Sequence record: NC_048054.1
Reading direction: 5' to 3' (one strand)
DNA: 64,000 nucleotides
Positions 1,489 through 22,957 of the stretch are shown piece after piece (the first letter of the stretch is position 1; every line of letters begins with the position of its first letter). The translations under genes and the position numbers were made by a program. The notes under the pieces are model-generated. The model did no database searches. It worked only from the letters and a program-made list of their open reading frames with translations, and was not told the origin of the DNA.

Positions 1489-2514
1489 TTATTCCTTCAA
1501 TACACCGCCAATCTCCGCAAACATATTTTTGTAGACCAATGAGCCATCCAGCTTATCCAATCGTTCCGCCTGAACATAAAGTCTAGGTGATGTGCGCATG
1601 TTCGCCCACGTCTTTTCATTACGATCAAGTCCACCAAGCATCGGGACAATGACCATACTGAGATTCCTATTTGCTCTGACGAAACCTATGTCAATATGCT
1701 TCCTGTTTATGCTTATGAACAGTCTATTGATTGCGTCCAAACCAACAGGCCGATTGAATTCCGTGTCACTGACAGTATTGACTAAGCTAATGAGAAACCC
1801 TCTCTCCTTGCTTTCAATTTCAAACAGGTCTGCTTTCAAATCACCAACAGTTGACGCAGAGTAATACGACACGTCATGGCCATAGTCTTTGAGGCAAGCA
1901 CCTAGCGTACGGGCTGATTCAATGTGCGCTACGTTATCATCTCGCAGGATATAGACAGGAGCATCGGACTGATATGTCTTCTGCGCAATCATGCTGATAA
2001 GATCGCAAGAGGGCTTGCCTACAGTGGCCAAACCCTTATTGGCGACAAAGAATTTGTCACGATAAACATCATACACGTTTGGTGGCATGTACTTCATGTA
2101 ATCATCGTCCAGGCTAAGTATCACGCGAGGCTTAGTTAACTGGACGACGAGTTGCATACTGCGAAGTGATGCCTTGTACTCCGTGTCAGATAATACGCGA
2201 CTAATAGGCAGATACTGCACGACAACAAATCGGTCATCAATTGAATCGACAACCGAGCGTATCAGCGTACTGCCTAACGTAGGCCCAGCAGAGAATTGGG
2301 TAACGATCATTAGGCCATCTTCCACTAAGCCTTTCGACTCAGCGAGCGTCATGCCGTTACCTGTCTGCTTTACCGCGCGCTCCCACGTTATTGAAGGTTC
2401 GTCTCGGCTTTCGGCGTGTACAGAAGCTGCGCCGTACCAGAGACAGGCTCCAAGAATGTAAGCAGCAATACGTTGTCTGGATCGGCTTCGGCTGGAGTAA
2501 CAGTTTCCGGCCAT
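1489..2514 (-). CDS. Secreted/periplasmic protein, ABC substrate-binding/periplasmic-sensor-like fold
   Basis: GAGGAG SD 7 nt before the ATG. Sec-type signal (RSRSRQR-IAAYILGACLWYGAA-SVHA/ES). Segment KPRVILSLDDDYMKY resembles the KPDxIIxxDDxA motif of COG2984-like sensor domains. Confidence 0.55.
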   Translation of the reverse strand: MAGNCYSSRSRSRQRIAAYILGACLWYGAASVHAESRDEPSITWERAVKQTGNGMTLAESKGLVEDGLMIVTQFSAGPTLGSTLIRSVVDSIDDRFVVVQYLPISRVLSDTEYKASLRSMQLVVQLTKPRVILSLDDDYMKYMPPNVYDVYRDKFFVANKGLATVGKPSCDLISMIAQKTYQSDAPVYILRDDNVAHIESARTLGACLKDYGHDVSYYSASTVGDLKADLFEIESKERGFLISLVNTVSDTEFNRPVGLDAINRLFISINRKHIDIGFVRANRNLSMVIVPMLGGLDRNEKTWANMRTSPRLYVQAERLDKLDGSLVYKNMFAEIGGVLKE

Positions 2515-3212
2515 AGAACTTCTCCTCTCTCGTCAGTGACGTAAGGAATGCCGTTGCCTTTGCCCAATCCATGACGCAAAGCCCAAACGGTATCGGCATT
2601 CTCCTGCACGAACACTAACCCTTTTGTTTCTGGCTCACCCGCACTGTCTTCAAGTGCTGTAACACGCGCCGTAAGAAGCTGTGCATCAGTCTGAATAGTA
2701 CGAATGGCGCTAAGGTTAGAGTTAACGCGCTGGTTCATGTTGTTGAACATGGTGAAGAACGAATTGTTCATCGCCGTGCGAACGCCGTCCGTATAGGACT
2801 TAGGAATCAGTTCGTCGTTATCGTAGGTTGTTACACCTGAGCGCACAAGAACTTTACCGGTAAGACGTCCACCACTTGCGCTGATAATCTGAGGGGCTGG
2901 CAAATCAGCTTCGTCCCAGACTTGAACAGTGGTCATCACCGTATTGTAGTCGGTCTCTTCCTGCCACGTATTTCTATAAGGAGCTGTGGCAGTTTTGGAT
3001 TTACGACGCATCACCTTTTTATAGTTAGCGCTCGTACCGTCCGCGATAATCCAGAGACCGTTCAGTGGGAAAACGCGAGTGTAAGGCTCGGCGAATGCTA
3101 AGATGATCGTCACATCAGCACTTACCTTATACACAATATCGTTCGACGCTGACAGTCCTTGCTGTTGTGCAAGACTAATCAACGTGTCCACGTAGTTAGT
3201 CAACTGGCTCAT
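2388..3212 (-). CDS. Virion/tail-associated protein with C-terminal small beta domain
   Basis: AGGAG SD. C-terminal WALRHGLG..PYVTDERGE..DNVLLLTFLEPVSGTA matches the common phage W-x-I-x-H-N-L-G type module. Confidence 0.7.
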   Translation of the reverse strand: MSQLTNYVDTLISLAQQQGLSASNDIVYKVSADVTIILAFAEPYTRVFPLNGLWIIADGTSANYKKVMRRKSKTATAPYRNTWQEETDYNTVMTTVQVWDEADLPAPQIISASGGRLTGKVLVRSGVTTYDNDELIPKSYTDGVRTAMNNSFFTMFNNMNQRVNSNLSAIRTIQTDAQLLTARVTALEDSAGEPETKGLVFVQENADTVWALRHGLGKGNGIPYVTDERGEVLWPETVTPAEADPDNVLLLTFLEPVSGTAQLLYTPKAETNLQ

Positions 3213-3672
3213 CCGAGACTCCTAACGATTGAAGAATAATAGAACTTTTATCGGAGAAGGCCTTAGCGATCAGTTTGGCAGCAGCCTTATCGACAACGAG
3301 TGTGCTGATTTTCCCTTTGGTGTTGCACACAATAGTCTGCGGAGCAAACTGCGCACAAGCCAAAGCAAATAGCAGATGGTTGCCTAAGTCACCAGAGATG
3401 CTAATCTCAACGCCAAGTTCTGGCACTGAGATGTTCTGGTTGATTTCGGCAACGAACTGCGCCAGCACCACAGGGTCGATTTCAGGAGGCGCTGTATCAT
3501 ATCCTTCGACAAGATCAATCTGACCAGTAGAAGGGTCAAACGCGAATGCAGATGGGTCGCCAATGATTCTGCCGAATAGCTCGTCACTGACTTCAATGCA
3601 ATCGTCGTCTGTCTTCTCGCGCACACGACCAATGACTGCGTTCGTGGCGCGATTGATTTTGATTATCGGCAT
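3196..3672 (-). CDS. Putative tail-fibre assembly chaperone (158 aa)
   Basis: Follows a fibre gene; start moved to the ATG at 3672 (AGGTG SD, 1 nt after the upstream TAA); size and position typical of Tfa-like proteins. Confidence 0.5.
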   Translation of the reverse strand: MPIIKINRATNAVIGRVREKTDDDCIEVSDELFGRIIGDPSAFAFDPSTGQIDLVEGYDTAPPEIDPVVLAQFVAEINQNISVPELGVEISISGDLGNHLLFALACAQFAPQTIVCNTKGKISTLVVDKAAAKLIAKAFSDKSSIILQSLGVSDEPVD

Positions 3673-9670: not shown

Positions 9671-10162
9671 TTACGGTCTTACCCAGATGGCACCTGGCGC
9701 AATCTCATTATCAATAGCAGGGTCGGTGTCTTGCACGAACACCTGTACTGTACCTGGGTTACCTGGGGCACCAGTTGGGCCAGTAGGGCCTGTCGGACCA
9801 GCAGGACCACGATTACCTACGTAACCTTGCTTCCCCTGTAGTCCATCATTACCACGAGGACCAGGACAGCCATCAGTACCACGACGACCATCGCTACCCA
9901 TGAGACCGTCAATACCGTCACGACCAGCAGGCCCAACGCCGCCGGCAGGACCGTAACCGATGCTATGAATAGTAGGTAGCCCAGATATCTGGAGCTTGCC
10001 GATAGTAGGGATGTTGATAGACAGAAGACCTGTAACCGCATCAAATGCCCCGCTAAGTTGGCTATCGTCTTGCGTAGTGTCAACTGTGATTCCCCCTTCG
10101 GTCGCTACGACAGGACCAGAAGCATTGGCCTTGACTAGCGATATATCAACTTTTTCTACCAC
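9671..10162 (-). CDS. Collagen-like fibre protein B (~23 triplets)
   Basis: Gly-X-Y run, shared N-module, C-terminal PGAIWVRP motif. Confidence 0.85.
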   Translation of the reverse strand: MVEKVDISLVKANASGPVVATEGGITVDTTQDDSQLSGAFDAVTGLLSINIPTIGKLQISGLPTIHSIGYGPAGGVGPAGRDGIDGLMGSDGRRGTDGCPGPRGNDGLQGKQGYVGNRGPAGPTGPTGPTGAPGNPGTVQVFVQDTDPAIDNEIAPGAIWVRP

Positions 10163-10171
10163 GTTGCCTCC

Positions 10172-10804
10172 TTATGGCCATGTGATATTCTGATCTTTGG
10201 TAGGGTCCACCCAGATCGTGCCAGCAGCAACGTTCCCTGGGTTAGTAGCACTGACGATGATAGACAGGCGTCCAGCAGGACCTGCAGGGCCGGTAGGACC
10301 CGTTGGTCCTGTAGAGCCAGTAGCGCCTGTCGGACCAGTACCGCCACGAGGACCAGTAGGACCAGTAGGACCCATAGGGCCTGTTCTACCATCTGGGCCA
10401 GTAGGACCAACAGGACCGGGTAGTCCGTCACGCCCGTCTGGCCCAGGGATACCTTGCTCACCATCTGGGCCCACAGGACCAGTACATCCAGGCTCACCTG
10501 GATTACCATCGCGACCATCTCGTCCGTCTTTACCATCAGCGCCTGTCTCTCCTCTTCCGCCCTGACGACCTTCTGGTATATCAGCAGCAGTAGGGAAACC
10601 GCCCACCTTAACTGTCTGCCCGTTAGCAAACTTGAGAGTAAGAATACCCGAAGTTGCATCGAACGACGAATCAGCAGTTACCTCTGAGGGAACCTGTTCG
10701 TCGCTAGGGTCTATCGAGAGAACCCCAGACTGAGCGCGAATCGCAGTAGGCGTAGACGAAGAACCAGCCTGAATGAGACCGGTCTTAACTTTAATCAGAC
10801 TCAT
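10172..10804 (-). CDS. Collagen-like fibre protein C (34 triplets)
   Basis: Gly-X-Y run rich in GPT; C-terminal AGTIWVDP motif. Confidence 0.85.
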
Positions 10805-12243
10805 TACTTTTTCTCCGCTTTCGCAACAATATCCGTGTTGTGTGCGAGCACATCACCAACGAAATAACAATCAAATGGATCAACGTCGATATCAACAGTT
10901 TTCACCAGATTATCTACGCGGCGAAACTCGTACACAGACACAGGTCCCTTACGACCTAGCACTGTATTCCCAGGCTGTACGTCACGCGCAGGGATATAAC
11001 GCCATACGCTATCGTCATACACAAGCACTGGATGTTCGTGTGTGAACTTCTGGCCGTTGATAACGAAGTAATGATCTTCTTCGCCATACTTCAAACCGAC
11101 AACAGTAGCGTTCACCAGATTACCTTTTAGGCTAGGCGAAGACCACTGACGGAAGTTCTTCGGCTGGTTAGAGAAACTCAGCAGGCTATCACCTACACGT
11201 AAGTCCTCGACAGCTTTAGGTCCTGTAATAGTTTCGACAACAGAACCAAACACAATACAGCCAGACGTTGAGCTTGTAGGGTTACGTGCAACAACTGTCA
11301 GCGCAGAACTCACGGTAACAGTAGGGCGTGAGGGTTGGCCCATGTCAGTCACTACGCAACGAATAGTGCCTTTGATTGTACGATCAGCACCAAGTCCGAG
11401 ACGCAGATAGAAGTTAACAATACACGTTGAGGTATCAGTAGCGCCAAGCGTTACGCCCTCAGTGGTTGTGATAGACCATTGATACTTATATGGACCTATA
11501 CCACCACGTGCATTGACAGGAAGGTATGCAAGCGAAGTAAATACATCAGAGCCTTGCACTGCACGTTGACCTACCATGTACAGGTTAGACACTGACGCAG
11601 CAAGAGGCGTTATAGTAGGCAGAGGCGGTGCTGGCGTAACGTTGGCTGTAGGGTACAACCAAACGAACACACGACCGTCTGTAGGCTGCGTGTTAGACTG
11701 AACAGCAGTTGTAATAGGCGCTGGGCCAGTAGGACCTGTAGCACCAGAGATACAGCTTGCGCCAGTAGCACCACGAGGACCGATGTTCCCTGTAGGACCG
11801 GGAGGACCGTCTGGACCAGTAGGACCGTCTGGACCTTGACGCCCAGTATCACCAGGAGGACCGTCTTCACCGTCGCGTCCTGGGTCACCAACAGGGCCAG
11901 TCTTACCTTTAGAGCCAGGGCCACCTTCGCAGCCCTGTCTACCTGTCTCACCGTCTCGACCATCACGTCCGTCACGGCCGGGAGCACCTGGAGCGCCGCG
12001 ACGCCCAGGCTTCCCTTCACCGAACATAGCAATAGTAGGAAGTCCGGGGACGTTCACTACTTCCCCGTTCTTCTTGATGAACACCAACACGCCTGTCTTG
12101 CTGTTAAACCTTACGCTTGCGATTTGAGTATTCGTCGCTAAGTCCGTAGACTCAAACTCGACGCTACCATCAACACCAACCAGCGACTTACCTTCATCGT
12201 TAGCGGTTGTTTCGATTTGCGAAAGTTTTAACTGTGTTGTCAT
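10804..12243 (-). CDS. Collagen-like fibre protein D with Ig-like domain and C-terminal Hint/intein domain
   Basis: 29+3 triplets, an Ig-like segment ([11 protein letters not shown]), then a Hint domain C329-N469. Confidence 0.85.
10837..11259 (-). other. Hint (mini-intein / bacterial intein-like) domain, 141 aa, no homing endonuclease
   Basis: Block [21 protein letters not shown]; block B FTHEHP; block F TVDIDVD..YFV; block G LAHN followed by Thr. Confidence 0.85.
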
Positions 12244-14579
12244 TTCGGTTCAACCTTAATGCACAAGTTACCCGACAGCTTCGATCCGTAGCTTGTAATC
12301 TGCGCGTTAACGATACGCACCTTAGCAACGATATCAATGAAGCCTTGAGGTTGGTTTTCTATCAGCACCGTGAACATCTGCGTCAGGCTGACGTTTGAAT
12401 ACGCAATAACTTCTGTCAGGCTTGCATCAGAAGTAACGACGTTAAAGCCCGCGCTACCAGTGCCTTTCAGGCCGCGACCGTATTCAGCTTCGGAGGTACC
12501 AGGCACCTTGAACGACAGAACGTATTCAAGATGTTCTTTACCGCTGGTGGCAGCAAAGCCTGGGCCGAGTTGACACTGGAAGTCAGCGACACACGTAAGC
12601 ATGACGCCTTTCTTGAACTCAATACGTTGCTGAATAACCAGCTCTTCCGAGTCGTCCGCATTCTGCTGAATGTTGTACATGTTGCGTGGGTCAGCTTCTT
12701 CGGCGAGAGCCTGAGTGTTACGAATCGTAATCTCTGGCCACTTACCAGTAATCTGAATGCCCTCACCCTGAATGATCTCAGGAGCAGCTATAGGCACGTC
12801 GATAGGAGGCAGACCTTGACGCTTGAACATGTAACCAGTCGGTGTAGGGATAGCGTCAATGATAACACCGTCAACCGAACTGTCTTTCGAGCCTACTGCC
12901 ATGACGTTCTCAAAGATTGTGATCTCAATGAGTGTGTCGGCAGGAATAGGCGACAACGTTTTCAGCACATTGCCAGTTACTGTGAAGTCCTGCGTGTGTA
13001 CTGTCAGGCCGCTCATGGCCATAACGCAGTGCGACTTATTCAGCGGAGTAGTTGGCAGAACAAATGTATCAGCATCATAAGGCAGGCGATACTGAGCAAC
13101 ACGAATACGAGTAGACCAGTTGGCGCGTTCTTCATAGCGAGCTACATAGAATGTGTACTTCTGACCTGACGGGATCGCTTCGGTTAACGTTACGCTGTTA
13201 CCATTCGTGAGTTTATACACGGTGGTAGGCTGCCACGTTGAACCGACGACACAGAATATCATGTCAACGCTATCAATCGGTTTGCTGCCGAGTTTAAACA
13301 GTGCAGTCTGGCCATCGCCGACACCCTCGTATGTTTCAAACAGGACAACATGGCCCTGAGAAGGCTCAACGCGGAACTGACGCATATCGAGCTGCATACG
13401 CTGTTCAGGATAGGACGAAAGCAGAAGCTGATCGTCAACGACACTGTATGCAGTACGTGGCTGGAGAACACCAGACGTGCCAAGCAACAGGTCGGTCGAG
13501 CTATCGAGAATCTCAGACAGCGTATAGCGCAGCTTATCAGGCGTTGCTGTAGTCACAACAGAACTGAATAACAGTTTGCCTGGAGGAACAAACAGCGTAC
13601 CAGTTGTCTGACGAGTACCACCAGCAACAGGTCCCCAATAAGGCTGCAAGTCTTTGCCTCTGTACAATGCCCACGCTTCTGGTACATCGTTATTCAGTGG
13701 CCACGGAATGCCAGCAGACGGAGTTGTTGGGTTAGTGATGCGTCGCCACACAGCGATAGTTGTCTGTGCGCTAACGAATGGAATCGCGCTGTCCATGTTG
13801 ACCAGTTGACCATTCGTGTATTTGAAGTGACGACATGCGCCGGCGCCTGTGCCAGAGATTGTCTGAATCAGAACAACCTCGTTAGCTTTCAACACTGAGG
13901 ACAGCGAAGCAATCTTGAACGTGTTTGCGTTGATGAAACCTGCGGCAGTAATCTGTCCGCTGAACACACGGTCATGCTCGCTGAAAGCCCAATAGTATGA
14001 GCCTTGTCCATAACGATATGCAGTACCTGGAGAGCGAGTGCCGTCCGAGTTAACGTGCATATCAAGAACCGACACGGCATTGAACACGTTATCGCTCAAG
14101 CTCGGCAGATTCTGGAGCGTTGCCACACTCGGTATAGAGGTGTAGTCCGCCATTTTCACAGCAAGAATCTTTTGGATGTCCTGCTGAATATGTACGAGAA
14201 GGCTAACGCGATTGATAGAGTTTGGTACGGCGATGATAGGCTCTTGTAGAACAACGTGACCAAAAGGTCGGTTGTCAGAGAGCATGATCAACAGCTCACC
14301 AACTCGTTTCAGTGCTTCACCTGCAACGTAGTTGACTTTAATATCAAAGATAAAGCGGGCGCTGTTCTCGGTAAGAACCTGAACATACGACAATGCGCCC
14401 GACGCAAGCTCGCTGCCAAGTAACTGCTCTGGAACCACAGACGGGTTAGAGCCAACAAAGTCACCTGCTTTAAACGACACTGGCTGAACAGCAAGTCCAC
14501 CAGCGTTAGCGTTCGCAACGGCCTGTTCTCCCTGAGGCGTTAGACGCAATGCGTCAACGTAGATAGATTCAGTGGCCAT
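12240..14579 (-). CDS. Baseplate/tail-collar fibre-anchoring protein (779 aa)
   Basis: N-terminus [21 protein letters not shown] resembles the P2 gpH-type tail-collar domain. Three GDGxTxxFxL-type repeats. Start at ATG 14579 (AAGGAG SD). Confidence 0.65.
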
Positions 14580-14618
14580 CAAAGAACTCCTTGGGTTTTA
14601 ACTCTTATAAATTATCGT

Positions 14619-21502: not shown

Positions 21503-21628
21503 TTATTTCCTCTTGTCTGAGGCTCTAGGAATTTTTGGAGCCTTTGCGGGCACGAAGGGACTCGTATCGAGTTTTCGTTTACCGTGAAGAATGTCTAAAT
21601 ACTGTTTCCAATTGGTGCAGCGGCTCAT
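21503..21628 (-). CDS. Small basic protein (41 aa, MSRCTNWKQYLDILHGKRK...)
   Basis: GAGGAG SD 6 nt upstream; TAA-C-ATG coupling to PAAR; GCTAATTT motif 23 nt upstream. Confidence 0.6.
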   Translation of the reverse strand: MSRCTNWKQYLDILHGKRKLDTSPFVPAKAPKIPRASDKRK

Positions 21629-21650
21629 GGTATTCTCCTCTGTTAGACAC

Positions 21651-21658
21651 AAATTAGC
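21651..21658 (-). promoter_or_regulatory. GCTAATTT motif, candidate late promoter for the baseplate operon
   Basis: Located between a terminator and the first gene of the operon. Confidence 0.55.
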
Positions 21659-21671
21659 TTGTTGTGCAGCA

Positions 21672-21707
21672 GAAACGAAAACGGGCGACCCGAAGGCCAC
21701 CCGTTTT
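21672..21707 (-). terminator. Rho-independent terminator closing the ncRNA-like interval
   Basis: AAAACGGGTGGCC-TTCG-GGTCGCCCGTTTT then CGTTTCT. Confidence 0.8.
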
Positions 21708-21737
21708 CTAGTGCTTGGATTTTGTGTCGTTACTCCC

Positions 21738-21896
21738 TCACACCCGAAGCGAGTGCCTATCAGCTTTCGCTGGTAAGCCGGAGTGGAAGACCGAGAGTGG
21801 AGCCGCACGCCACGGCAACAGTAAGTGACTCTCGGGCCTAGATAGCGCGTGACCAAGCAGCACAATCGCCATCAACGACACGAAGAACAAAATCAT
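21738..21896 (-). CDS. Possible 52-aa hydrophobic peptide (MILFFVSLMAIVLLGHAL...)
   Basis: AGGAG SD 5 nt upstream and an 18-aa hydrophobic N-terminus; its 3' part overlaps strong RNA hairpins. Confidence 0.35.
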   Translation of the reverse strand: MILFFVSLMAIVLLGHALSRPESHLLLPWRAAPLSVFHSGLPAKADRHSLRV

Positions 21897-21964
21897 GTTT
21901 GCTCCTGTGTCTCTCTGTAAGTAAAACATTTGCAAATGTCGATCAAGTTACTTCGAATTGCCCT

Positions 21965-22362
21965 TCGCCCAACATCACTAGGGTTTCAATTCTTTTTCTC
22001 TCTTTACCGCCTGGGTTGCGGCGAACCGCGCACAAGAACAACGCTTCAACGATACGTGGGCAGGAAGGGCACGTACCGCATTCACATCGCTCAAGCGAAG
22101 GAGGTCTCCCATCGGTGATCTGCGGTGGTTAATACACTCTTTAACAATCGCTCTTGTTGTGCATTAGATCGTGGTAGGAACGCGATTGACCGCTAACAAG
22201 TCCTATACGATATTTCACTACCCGGAAAAAGTGGGCAAGCTATGGCAGCACGTCAACGACAGCAGGCGCGGACACACTCCATTAAGCATTGTTAAGGGCA
22301 ACACTTAACAGGCTGTGAACAGCTTTGACCAAATGTAGAGTCGCTCGTCGCCCAACATCACT
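21965..22362 (-). repeat. 15-nt direct repeat AGTGATGTTGGGCGA (copies at 22348-22362 and 21965-21979)
   Basis: Exact match; both copies preceded by CAGG-NN-GTAAA(A)GAG and enclosed by different but pairing stems. Confidence 0.85.
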
Positions 22363-22957
22363 TGAGTATCTCGTCTACACTCTTTTACTCCCTGAATACC
22401 GTACAAGGAATACGGCACCCATGAGGGTCTGCGGATGTTTATCACTCTCAGACTCTTGAGCCACTATCTGGAAACTAACACGTTGAGTCGTCCGCTGGAT
22501 GACGTGTTAGCTCTCCTCTCCCCGTCGTGCGAGGGCCAGAGTGGTAGCTGATGGATTGTCATGAAGTCCTGACAGGAGTCATCGCTTCCCAATGCCCACA
22601 GAGTGAAAGTCTATGCGCATCAGGCAGCGTAGGCTGCGGTACTGCTGTCCCTATTAGATGGTCCACAACGTTGAGAATACGTTCCAACCATCTACGTGCC
22701 TAGAGGCCATTGCCGTGCCATGTCTTATGCAAGATGAAATCAAGCTGGGTCCTGGTAGACGTCAGCAGCAGAGCAATAGTCTATCACGTGGGTGCCGGGG
22801 TTGTCCTCACGATTACAGAGCGTAAACTCAAACCGGCTGGAGGCCTATGTGTTGGCAAGAACAACTCACAGGTTTATGGCTCACGGAGAGCGCCCGCTAA
22901 GTACACTCTCCGTTGATACATCTTGATATTACTATCTGCAATTTTTATTTACAGATT

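What the first reader, a model, noticed from the sequence alone, without database searches (positions are those of the whole stretch)
10804..11259. Catalytically complete Hint/mini-intein domain capping a collagen tail fibre
Seen: C1 (11259), block B THEH, block F Asp, and terminal His-Asn followed by Thr, with only a 10-aa C-extein ([10 protein letters not shown]) and no endonuclease. Known: these residues suffice for splicing or cleavage in inteins and BIL domains, and phage inteins usually sit in replication or packaging enzymes. Inference: the Hint domain may act as a self-removing folding chaperone (analogous to S74 domains), splice a short basic tag onto the fibre, or covalently ligate the fibre C-terminus to another nucleophile (Hedgehog-like) such as a partner protein or sugar.
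Basis: partly seen in the sequence, partly recalled or inferred. Interest (0 to 1): 0.75.

Follow-up and report, generated by a model that had tools for sequence, protein, structure and literature searches.

The report
Self-cleaving Hint cap on phage fibre
One of three collagen-like fibre proteins of the jumbo Dickeya phage AD1 ends in a small intein-like (Hint) domain with every catalytic residue conserved. It most likely cuts itself off after translation, and the same kind of cap, always followed by a tiny lysine-bearing tail, sits on many uncharacterised phage fibre proteins.

Summary
The window is Dickeya phage vB_DsoM_AD1. ORF 10804-12243(-) is gp108 (479 aa): N-terminal domain, 33 Gly-X-Y triplets, Ig-like domain, then a 141-aa Hint domain (C329 to N469) and a 10-aa tail.

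The Hint domain's best sequence and fold matches are bacterial intein-like (BIL) domains, not true inteins. In 23 orthologues G328, C329, T401, D451, H468 and N469 are invariant, and dN/dS is 0.09. The +1 residue is not conserved (T, S, A, L, V or M), so canonical splicing is not the selected function. Part of the tail's conservation comes from the ribosome-binding site of the next gene.

Dickeya phage JA11 has a syntenic 324-aa orthologue with no Hint domain. It ends 5 residues before the predicted cut.

Most likely this is a BIL-type self-removing cap. I found no virion proteomics, so cleavage is inferred.

New here:
- 106 of 148 distant relatives are likewise C-terminal caps, and every neighbourhood inspected is a phage tail module.
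- 103 of the 106 short tails contain lysine (controls 34-39%).

Orthologue records (Y3, NCTB) already note an "intein domain"; I found no functional study.

The parts
10804..12243 (-). gp108 (YP_009811540) CDS, 479 aa plus stop. Collagen-like virion protein with a C-terminal Hint cap.
   Evidence: ORF list; 100% match to Dickeya phage vB_DsoM_AD1 72804-74243; phrog_38766 over the full length at 1e-255.
12019..12243 (-). N-terminal domain (residues 1-75), shared with paralogues gp107 and gp106. Probably the virion-attachment end (inferred).
   Evidence: Alignment of the three paralogues; short beta strands in the model; dN/dS 0.13.
11719..12018 (-). Collagen-like region (residues 76-175): Gly at every third position from 77 to 173, except Cys164. 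Cys105 and Cys164 are invariant.
   Evidence: Pfam Collagen 1.1e-13; Gly positions; invariant columns.
11608..11718 (-). Post-collagen segment with invariant Trp195 and Pro198 (also present at the C-terminal ends of gp106 and gp107), followed by a Pro-rich linker (residues 176-212).
11281..11607 (-). Ig-like beta-sandwich (residues about 213-321), the likely distal domain of the mature fibre.
   Evidence: AlphaFold pLDDT about 77-92, all-beta; Foldseek matches to Ig and cadherin domains; dN/dS 0.105 for residues 176-321.
11260..11280 (-). Ser/Thr-rich linker (residues 322-328) ending in invariant Gly328, the residue before the predicted cut (position -1).
   Evidence: The Hint-less JA11 orthologue ends opposite residue 323.
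10837..11259 (-). Hint domain, BIL / PT-HINT type (residues 329-469, 141 aa, 15.8 kDa).
   Evidence: 35 of 141 columns are invariant; dN/dS 0.093.
11257..11259 (-). Cys329 codon (block A, position 1), the predicted nucleophile for the N-S acyl shift at Gly328|Cys329.
   Evidence: Invariant in 23 orthologues; Cys in 100 of 103 distant relatives.
11032..11043 (-). Block B, Thr401-His402-Glu403-His404.
   Evidence: Thr401, His402 and Glu403 are invariant; His404 is kept in 22 of 23. The block aligns to the Thr-x-x-His motif of BIL 2lwy.
10837..10893 (-). Blocks F and G: invariant Asp451, an acidic run (residues 451-458), then invariant His468-Asn469 (10842-10837).
   Evidence: His-Asn ends the domain in 141 of 148 distant relatives.
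10807..10836 (-). 10-residue C-terminal tail (Thr470 to Lys479) containing three Lys.
   Evidence: Synonymous divergence is only 0.42, against 0.9-1.8 elsewhere in the gene. The model is not confident here (pLDDT below 50).
10802..10816 (-). GGAG ribosome-binding site (10816-10813) inside the Ala-Glu-Lys codons of the tail. The ATG of gp107 (10804-10802) overlaps the gp108 stop codon.
   Evidence: A nine-base stretch holding the GGAG site is identical in 10 related phages, 8-9 nt before the next start codon.
10172..10804 (-). gp107, a 210-aa collagen-like paralogue without Ig-like or Hint domains.
9671..10162 (-). gp106, a 163-aa collagen-like paralogue without Ig-like or Hint domains.
12240..14582 (-). 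gp109, a 780-aa upstream protein of the same fibre operon. Its stop codon overlaps the gp108 start codon.
   Evidence: weak Phage_tail_fib N-terminal hit. The same gene order recurs in relatives.

Best explanation
gp108 is made as a 50-kDa precursor. Its last 151 residues are a BIL-type (PT-HINT-like) Hint domain plus a 10-residue tail, acting as a single-use, self-removing cap.

Inferred chemistry, by analogy with characterised BIL domains:
1. Cys329, helped by Thr401 and His404, shifts the Gly328-Cys329 peptide bond to a thioester.
2. The thioester is resolved by water or an amine. This frees a fibre of about 33 kDa that ends at Gly328, just after the Ig-like domain.
3. Asn469, helped by His468, cyclises and cuts off the tail.

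Cleavage rather than canonical splicing is the selected outcome. The mature fibre then matches the full-length product of the Hint-less orthologue in phage JA11.

Shown here: the domain identity, the conserved residues, purifying selection, the natural Hint-less orthologue, and the recurrence of the architecture. Inferred: that cleavage happens, when it happens, and what advantage the transient cap gives.
For: 1. Best sequence and fold matches are BIL domains: 2lwy at E 9e-7 with the single sequence and 5.5e-14 with the profile, Foldseek TM 0.80; Tetrahymena BIL2 comes next; true inteins are weaker.
2. G328, C329, T401, D451, H468 and N469 are invariant in 23 orthologues that go down to 38% identity in this domain.
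3. dN/dS of the Hint domain is 0.093, as low as the Ig-like domain. A C-terminal cap could be lost through a single stop codon, so its retention argues for a selected function.
4. The +1 residue varies (T, S, A, L, V, M) while everything else is kept. This is the BIL pattern, and BIL domains yield mainly N- and C-cleaved products (PMC7664689).
5. The JA11 syntenic orthologue (324 aa, 49% identical) has no Hint domain and ends opposite residue 323, 5 residues before the predicted cut.
6. Of 148 non-orthologous relatives, 141 end in His-Asn. In 106 of them no more than 25 residues follow. Position 1 is Cys in 100 of 103, and position -1 is Gly in 66 of 104.
7. All eight gene neighbourhoods inspected are phage-like, and seven are clearly tail or fibre modules. 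In one, the capped protein follows a fibre that carries a Peptidase_S74 cap.
8. The domain is not hypervariable across phages isolated on Dickeya, Erwinia and Yersinia, so it is unlikely to be the receptor-binding tip.
Against: - There is no direct evidence of processing. The AD1 paper has no proteomics, the Y3 paper is not held, and the 'virion structural protein' labels do not say which part is in the virion.
- If only N-terminal cleavage mattered, the invariant His-Asn, the rule that at least one residue always follows Asn, and the near-universal tail lysine would have no explanation.
- JA11 shows the fibre can exist without a cap, so the benefit of the cap is unknown.
- One orthologue has Gln in place of the block B His.
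- Pfam PT-HINT is marginally below its cut-off for this protein.
- I could not inspect active-site geometry, because no model coordinates were available.
Confidence: 0.62

Rival explanations
1. Isopeptide or amine-directed ligation. The Gly328 thioester is resolved not by water but by a lysine side chain: one in the protein's own tail, one in the tail of a neighbouring chain of the trimer, or one in another virion protein. Asn469 cyclisation then releases the Hint domain. The product, a branched or cross-linked fibre C-terminus, cannot be encoded directly.
For: - 103 of 106 short tails in the cap family contain Lys, against 39% (maximum 55% in 500 resamplings) and 34% in control C-termini.
- Lys makes up 12.9% of tail residues against 3.6% in the rest of the same proteins, while Arg is not enriched.
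- Lys is the last residue in 20% of tails and the second-last in 36%, against 2% and 5% in controls.
- No cap ends exactly at Asn.
- Both Cys1 and His-Asn are invariant, as expected if both reactions are needed.
- The second-best fold and profile match is Tetrahymena BIL2. It joins its N-flank's C-terminus to Lys side chains (PMC8616854).
- Position -1 is usually Gly, often in a poly-Gly run.
Against: - The evidence is purely correlative.
- The lysine could instead dock on the acidic block F surface, aid translation termination or stability, or partly reflect A-rich sequence ahead of the next gene.
- In the AD1 clade the Glu-Lys codons are constrained by the ribosome-binding site.
- JA11 manages without any such chemistry.
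- The model gives no confident placement of the tail.
Confidence: 0.17
2. Canonical or BIL-type protein splicing. The Hint domain excises itself and joins the 10-residue tail to Gly328 by a normal peptide bond, giving a 34.4-kDa fibre with a short basic C-terminal tag.
For: - Thr at +1 in AD1 and in 20 of 23 orthologue clusters, together with a complete class-1 residue set.
- BIL domains can ligate even without a +1 nucleophile (titles of Dassa 2004 and Aranko 2013, as cited).
Against: - The +1 residue is Ala, Leu, Val or Met in orthologues that keep all other catalytic residues.
- Across the wider cap family, Ser, Thr or Cys occupies +1 in only 12 of 106.
- A directly encoded tag would need no Hint domain.
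- The tail's conservation is largely explained at the nucleotide level: low dS and an invariant ribosome-binding site.
- JA11 has no equivalent tail.
Confidence: 0.12
3. The Hint domain is not processed. It stays on the virion as a structural or binding tip, or is an evolutionary passenger kept only because it was inherited.
For: - Orthologues are labelled as full-length 'virion structural protein'.
- A stand-alone, degenerate Hint-like ORF in phage NCTB shows that non-catalytic copies do occur.
Against: - Every catalytic residue is invariant and dN/dS is 0.09.
- There is no host-linked variation.
- The cap would be easy to lose through a stop codon, as has evidently happened in JA phages, yet it is kept in all other relatives seen.
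Confidence: 0.08

Closest known systems
A-type bacterial intein-like (BIL) domains, Pfam PT-HINT (PF07591); solved example Clostridium thermocellum BIL, PDB 2lwy
   Same: - Best sequence, profile and fold match.
- Cys at position 1, the Thr-x-x-His motif, a terminal His-Asn, and no conserved +1 nucleophile.
- No endonuclease.
- Found in variable surface-exposed proteins.
- Characterised members give mainly N- and C-cleavage.
   Different: - Known BIL / PT-HINT domains sit inside bacterial secreted proteins, in front of a sizeable C-terminal part such as a toxin domain.
- Here the domain is terminal, followed by only 1-25 residues that almost always include Lys.
- The carrier is a phage fibre made in the cytoplasm.
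- The AD1 protein scores 1.3 bits below the Pfam cut-off.
Tetrahymena thermophila BUBL-locus BIL2 domain (PDB 6y75 / 6tmm)
   Same: - Second-best fold and profile match.
- The N-flank ends in Gly.
- Its reaction transfers the N-flank's C-terminus to a lysine side chain.
- The phage caps keep a lysine in the C-flank.
   Different: - Only 16-18% identity.
- A eukaryotic polyubiquitin-like context in which both flanks are folded ubiquitin-like domains.
- Isopeptide formation is not shown for any phage cap.
Canonical mini-inteins (e.g. gp41-1, Pho RadA, Mtu RecA splicing domains)
   Same: Same fold and the same catalytic blocks A, B, F and G. AD1 itself has Thr at +1.
   Different: - Not inserted inside a conserved host protein.
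- No real C-extein.
- The +1 nucleophile is not conserved in orthologues.
- The Hint-less orthologue simply ends, rather than continuing past the insertion point.
- Sequence and fold scores are weaker than for BIL domains.
Hedgehog C-terminal autoprocessing (Hog) domain
   Same: - Same topology: cargo, then Gly|Cys, then a C-terminal Hint domain.
- Self-cleavage through a thioester that an external nucleophile resolves.
   Different: - There is no sterol-recognition region after the Hint domain here, only 10 residues.
- The terminal His-Asn is present and invariant here, whereas Hog uses only the first acyl shift.
- The Pfam Hint (PF01079) model does not match this protein.
Peptidase_S74 intramolecular chaperone domain of phage tailspikes and fibres
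   Same: - A functional analogy only: a C-terminal module of phage fibre proteins that cuts itself off.
- In one metagenomic phage an S74-capped fibre and a Hint-capped protein are neighbours in the same tail module.
   Different: - Unrelated fold and chemistry.
- No S74 hit in gp108.
- A chaperone role for the Hint cap is not supported, because paralogues and the JA11 orthologue fold without it.

Membership tests
HINT superfamily | Hint fold (all-beta horseshoe of about 130-150 residues) | tested here: met
   AlphaFold model pLDDT 80-92 over residues 329-471. The top 20 Foldseek PDB hits are all Hint domains, best TM 0.80.
HINT superfamily | Block A nucleophile at position 1 and the block B Thr-x-x-His motif | tested here: met
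   Cys329 and Thr401 are invariant; His404 is kept in 22 of 23 orthologues. The motif is aligned to 2lwy.
A-type BIL / PT-HINT | Conserved His-Asn at the C-terminal end of the domain | tested here: met
   His468-Asn469 are invariant. 141 of 148 distant relatives end in His-Asn. The feature is taken from the review.
A-type BIL / PT-HINT | No conserved nucleophile at the +1 position | tested here: met
   The +1 residue is T, S, A, L, V or M among orthologues. Ser, Thr or Cys occupies +1 in only 12 of 106 caps. The feature is taken from PMC7664689.
A-type BIL / PT-HINT | Closer in sequence to BIL domains than to inteins; passes the Pfam PT-HINT model | tested here: inconclusive
   BIL 2lwy is the top hit, and PT-HINT is the best Hint-type Pfam family. 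However, it scores 26.4 bits against a cut-off of 27.7. 45 of 78 cap relatives match PT-HINT at E<=1e-3, the best at 1e-39.
A-type BIL / PT-HINT | Autocatalytic N- and/or C-terminal cleavage | not testable with these tools
   No proteomic or biochemical data were found for any member of this phage clade.
Canonical intein | Inserted within a host protein whose two exteins together form the conserved functional protein | tested here: not met
   The C-flank is only 10 residues. The Hint-less JA11 orthologue ends before the junction with nothing corresponding to a C-extein.
Canonical intein | Conserved Cys, Ser or Thr at +1 for trans-esterification | tested here: not met
   Present in AD1 (Thr470) but replaced by Ala, Leu, Val or Met in orthologues.
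Hedgehog Hog domain | Sterol/adduct-recognition region following the Hint module | tested here: not met
   Only 10 residues follow the domain, and there is no PF01079 hit.
B-type BIL (Pfam Hint_2) | Lacks the intein-type C-terminal motif; full-length match to Hint_2 | tested here: not met
   Hint_2 matches only residues 329-372, at 19.4 bits against a cut-off of 28.4. His-Asn is present.
Peptidase_S74 intramolecular chaperone | Sequence match to the S74 chaperone domain | tested here: not met
   No Pfam hit at E<=1, and no S74 structure among the Foldseek hits.
Bacterial/phage collagen-like protein | Uninterrupted Gly-X-Y repeats long enough for a triple helix | tested here: met
   Pfam Collagen 1.1e-13. 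Gly occurs at every third position from 77 to 173 with one Cys substitution, and these columns are invariant. Trimer formation itself was not tested.

The most novel reading that the evidence does not exclude
The Hint caps of phage fibres form a distinct functional class. Their conserved tail lysine is the built-in acceptor for the thioester. The cap therefore performs 'isopeptide splicing', as Tetrahymena BIL2 does, and leaves the fibre's C-terminal glycine amide-linked to a lysine. If the released tail peptide uses both its new alpha-amine and its lysine side chain, it could covalently staple neighbouring chains of the trimeric fibre.

This would explain together the invariant Cys1, the invariant His-Asn, the missing +1 nucleophile, the rule that at least one residue follows Asn, the single-lysine tails, and the poly-Gly linkers.
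Probability: 0.17. Interest if true: 0.85.

Novelty: new variant of a known kind. Interest (0 to 1): 0.6.

Why it matters
Phage fibres and receptor-binding proteins are the parts people engineer and model. A module that removes itself changes what the mature protein is: 33 kDa ending at Gly328, not 50 kDa.

Automatic annotation currently labels such proteins inconsistently, as 'tail protein', 'virion structural protein', 'intein domain protein' or pretoxin.

The survey suggests that a BIL-type Hint cap with a lysine-bearing mini-tail is a second widespread kind of self-processing C-terminal module on phage fibres, alongside the well-known S74 chaperone. It seems not to have been studied.

If the lysine is a reaction partner, this would be a natural, compact, ATP-independent system for C-terminal protein ligation, of interest to intein chemistry and protein engineering.

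If cleavage alone occurs, the finding is a useful annotation rule and a modest addition to BIL biology.

Tried and rejected
- Literature. Ten full-text searches found no paper on Hint or BIL domains in phage fibres. They also found no virion proteomics for AD1, Y3, Alexandra, Yoloswag or fHe-Yen9-02. The Y3 paper is not held.
- The listing of cluster members on ten cap proteins returned no informative names.
- The word-indexed homologue search with the Ig-like region found only capped orthologues and missed the JA proteins. The count of Hint-less orthologues therefore rests on tblastn of phage records.
- A six-frame scan of the window with an orthologue HMM found no second Hint domain.
- A promoter and terminator scan of the fibre operon found nothing above the shuffle expectation.
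- Rejected: true intein (membership rows), Hedgehog-type sterol transfer (no adaptor region), S74-type chaperone (no homology; the paralogues and the JA11 orthologue lack any Hint domain), and receptor-binding tip (the domain is too conserved across hosts).
- Active-site distances could not be measured because model coordinates are not exposed.
- A slip to record: while mapping block F, I read the consensus line that one search printed. No statement in this report rests on it. The block F statements rest on the invariant-column lists.
Full report
**Identity of the window**

The 3-kb stretch around the finding is 100% identical to Dickeya phage vB_DsoM_AD1 (NC_048054, genus Alexandravirus, 261.7 kb). 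Window coordinate equals record coordinate minus 62,000. AD1 is one of the 'hairy Myoviridae' jumbo phages. The proteins forming its tail 'hairs' are unknown, and the annotated fibre proteins are the candidates (PMC6143709).

The finding lies in gp108 (10804-12243, minus strand, 479 aa). gp108 sits in a run of translationally coupled genes, gp109-gp108-gp107-gp106-gp105. It follows the baseplate genes and a 1,511-aa tail protein. No promoter- or terminator-like sites above expectation interrupt the run.

The evidence that this is a Hint domain:
- Pfam finds Collagen (1.1e-13) and PT-HINT (9.4e-6; 26.4 bits against a cut-off of 27.7).
- phmmer against PDB gives the Clostridium thermocellum BIL domain 2lwy as best hit (9e-7, whole domain).
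- A 12-sequence profile raises this to 5.5e-14. Tetrahymena BIL2 follows at 1.7e-10, and true inteins score 1e-6 or weaker.
- An AlphaFold model built on 23 orthologues is confident for residues 329-471 (pLDDT 80-92) and for an Ig-like sandwich at about 213-321. It is not confident for the collagen part or the tail.
- Foldseek ranks 2lwy first (E 2e-8, TM 0.80), then BIL2 (6y75, 6tmm), then mini-inteins.

The domain is 141 aa with no endonuclease.

**Architecture**

gp108 has these parts, in order:
- An N-terminal domain (residues 1-75).
- 33 Gly-X-Y triplets (77-175).
- A short segment with invariant Trp195 and Pro198, then a Pro-rich linker.
- The Ig-like domain.
- A 7-residue Ser/Thr linker ending in Gly328.
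- The Hint domain.
- The tail.

gp107 (210 aa) and gp106 (163 aa) are paralogues. They share the N-terminal domain, the collagen region and the Trp/Pro end segment, and they stop there. The Hint domain is therefore not a general requirement for making these collagen-like proteins.

**Conservation**

Twenty-three orthologue clusters go as low as 38% pairwise identity in the Hint part (44% to AD1). They keep G328, C329, I330, V331, T401, H402, E403, D451, H468 and N469 invariant, and H404 in 22 of 23.

For seven Alexandra-like phages, dN/dS by region is:
- Hint domain: 0.093.
- Residues 176-321, including the Ig-like domain: 0.105.
- N-terminal domain: 0.129.
- Collagen region: 0.165.

A C-terminal module can be lost through a single stop codon without harming the rest of the protein. 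Such long retention under purifying selection therefore argues that the domain does something useful. This differs from an internal intein, which must stay active merely to avoid harming its host protein.

**Splicing is not the conserved outcome**

- The +1 residue is Thr in most orthologues. It is Ser, Ala or Leu in three metagenomic ones, Val in Yersinia phage fHe-Yen9-02, Met in the record called Salmonella phage Sen-NF, and Ala in phage NCTB.
- The tail looks conserved at the protein level. Its synonymous divergence, however, is only 0.42, against 0.9-1.8 elsewhere in the gene.
- A nine-base stretch holding a GGAG ribosome-binding site is identical in ten phages, 8-9 nt before the start codon of the next fibre gene. 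The invariant Glu477-Lys478 therefore partly reflect a nucleotide constraint.

**A natural control**

Dickeya phage JA11 (genus Salmondvirus; JA13, JA29 and JA33 likewise) has the same gene order. Its orthologue is 324 aa, 49% identical, and has no Hint domain. It ends opposite AD1 residue 323, five residues before Gly328|Cys329, and the next fibre gene starts 10 nt later.

The product predicted for AD1 after N-terminal cleavage therefore matches a complete, presumably functional protein in a related phage. More distant relatives (NCTB, metagenomic jumbo contigs) carry the cap, so loss in the JA lineage is the simpler reading. That is an inference.

**The wider family**

A full HMMER scan of 1.84 billion representatives with the 158-aa C-terminal piece found 439 proteins at E<=1e-3.

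Among the 148 listed non-orthologues:
- 141 end their Hint domain in His-Asn.
- 106 have at most 25 residues after it, and 92 have at most 12.
- None ends exactly at Asn.
- Position 1 is Cys in 100 of 103.
- Position -1 is Gly in 66 of 104, with a poly-Gly run in 48.
- Ser, Thr or Cys occupies +1 in only 12 of the 106.

The parts upstream of the cap are collagen (12 of 78), fn3, Ig, Calx-beta, PKD, BACON or phage tail-collar domains. PHROG tail-fibre and Hoc-like families also match.

All eight gene neighbourhoods looked up are phage-like:
- Two are syntenic jumbo-phage fibre operons.
- One is a P2-like baseplate and fibre module. There the capped protein follows a fibre that carries a Peptidase_S74 domain.
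- Two are siphovirus-like tail-tip regions. One lies after a tape-measure protein, the other after an NlpC/P60 tail protein.
- One is a cluster of Laminin_G and fibre-repeat proteins.
- One lies in a lysis and structural region.
- One contig is too short to classify.

BFVD also lists Hint-bearing proteins of uncultured Caudovirales, annotated as fn3, PASTA, 'Tip attachment protein J' or 'Hint domain containing'.

Phage NCTB carries two capped proteins in this module: the orthologue and a 1,304-aa Calx-beta protein. It also has a stand-alone degenerate Hint-like ORF.

**An unexpected regularity**

- 103 of the 106 short tails contain at least one Lys.
- Same-length C-termini of neighbouring phage ORFs contain Lys in 39% of cases (maximum 55% in 500 resamplings). 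A second control set gives 34%.
- Lys makes up 12.9% of tail residues against 3.6% in the rest of the same proteins. Arg is not enriched.
- Lys is the last residue in 20% of tails and the second-last in 36%, against 2% and 5% in controls.
- Most of the one-residue tails seen are a lone Lys.
- A penultimate Lys is an invariant column in the 12-sequence alignment.

This does not come from the query's own tail, because most alignments stop at or just after Asn. I cannot explain it with certainty.

**Mechanism**

The best-supported reading is a BIL-type self-removing cap:
1. An N-S acyl shift at Gly328|Cys329.
2. Resolution of the thioester.
3. Asn469 cyclisation.

Characterised BIL domains lack the +1 nucleophile and yield mainly N- and C-cleaved products (PMC7664689; PMC7765530). 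The steps themselves are inferred. No virion proteomics or biochemistry was found.

The invariant His-Asn, the obligatory residue after Asn and the tail lysine are not needed for simple N-terminal cleavage. They point to a role for the C-terminal reaction. The second-closest solved relative, Tetrahymena BIL2, transfers its N-flank's C-terminus to lysine side chains (PMC8616854). A lysine-directed resolution of the thioester is therefore the most interesting reading not excluded. The acceptor could lie in the same chain, in another chain of the trimer, or in another protein.

More ordinary roles for the lysine remain possible:
- Docking on the acidic block F surface.
- Aiding translation termination or protein stability.
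- Reflecting the A-rich sequence that precedes the next gene.

**What is known already**

The NCTB record uses similar names. The presence of the domain is therefore not a discovery.

As far as the searchable literature shows, four points are not described:
- The classification as a BIL-type terminal cap.
- The Hint-less natural orthologue as a control.
- The spread of the cap over phage fibre proteins.
- The lysine rule.

I rate it a new variant of a known kind, interest 0.6.

While mapping block F, I read the consensus line that the alignment tool printed. No statement here depends on it.

Noticed in passing
window 21503-22957: About 1.45 kb between the PAAR gene (gp114) and gp115 has no annotated feature in AD1 or in 34 related phages. 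It has 15-24 stops in every frame, yet it is 83-93% identical across relatives. Substitutions show no three-base periodicity (104/104/103) and there are many 1-nt indels. It therefore looks non-coding but conserved, and it is least variable around 22103-22402. There is no Rfam hit and GC content is normal. It may be a large non-coding RNA or a regulatory region inside the baseplate module.
   Followed up: partly
window 11752-11754 and 11929-11931 (Cys164, Cys105 of gp108): Two invariant cysteines lie in the collagen region. Cys164 replaces the Gly of one Gly-X-Y triplet, and Cys105 is also conserved in paralogues gp107 and gp106. They may form inter-chain disulfide knots.
   Followed up: no
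L004 5698-6159 (phage NCTB BN7874_135): A stand-alone 153-aa Hint-like ORF lies immediately downstream of the capped orthologue. It keeps the terminal His-Asn but lacks the block B His and has no N-terminal cargo. The same module has a second capped protein of 1,304 aa with a Calx-beta domain.
   Followed up: partly
L002 (PV359490 'Salmonella phage Sen-NF', 108.5 kb) and PV550095 ('Alcaligenes phage Afa-NA1', 78 kb): Two records with different stated hosts and non-jumbo lengths give identical tblastn scores to the Hint query. Sen-NF carries the whole jumbo-type fibre operon in the same order. The two records may be partial or mixed assemblies of one jumbo phage.
   Followed up: no
L021 8541-11089 (metagenomic 56-kb myovirus-like contig): A fibre with Phage_fiber_2 repeats and a Peptidase_S74 chaperone domain is directly followed by a 362-aa Hint-capped protein, at the end of a P2-like baseplate module. 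Two unrelated self-processing caps thus sit side by side.
   Followed up: partly
proteins P0032, P0036, P0041, P0063, P0093, P0118, P0137, P0146: Some relatives carry tandem Hint domains. Each ends in His-Asn-Lys and is joined to the next by a short Gly run and a Cys. Lys is also the commonest +1 residue when a long C-flank follows (15 of 35).
   Followed up: no
window 2389-3213 (gp100, HNH endonuclease) among fibre genes gp101/gp102: A free-standing HNH endonuclease gene sits inside the fibre-gene region of AD1, and at a comparable place in Yoloswag. It is not linked to the Hint domain.
   Followed up: no
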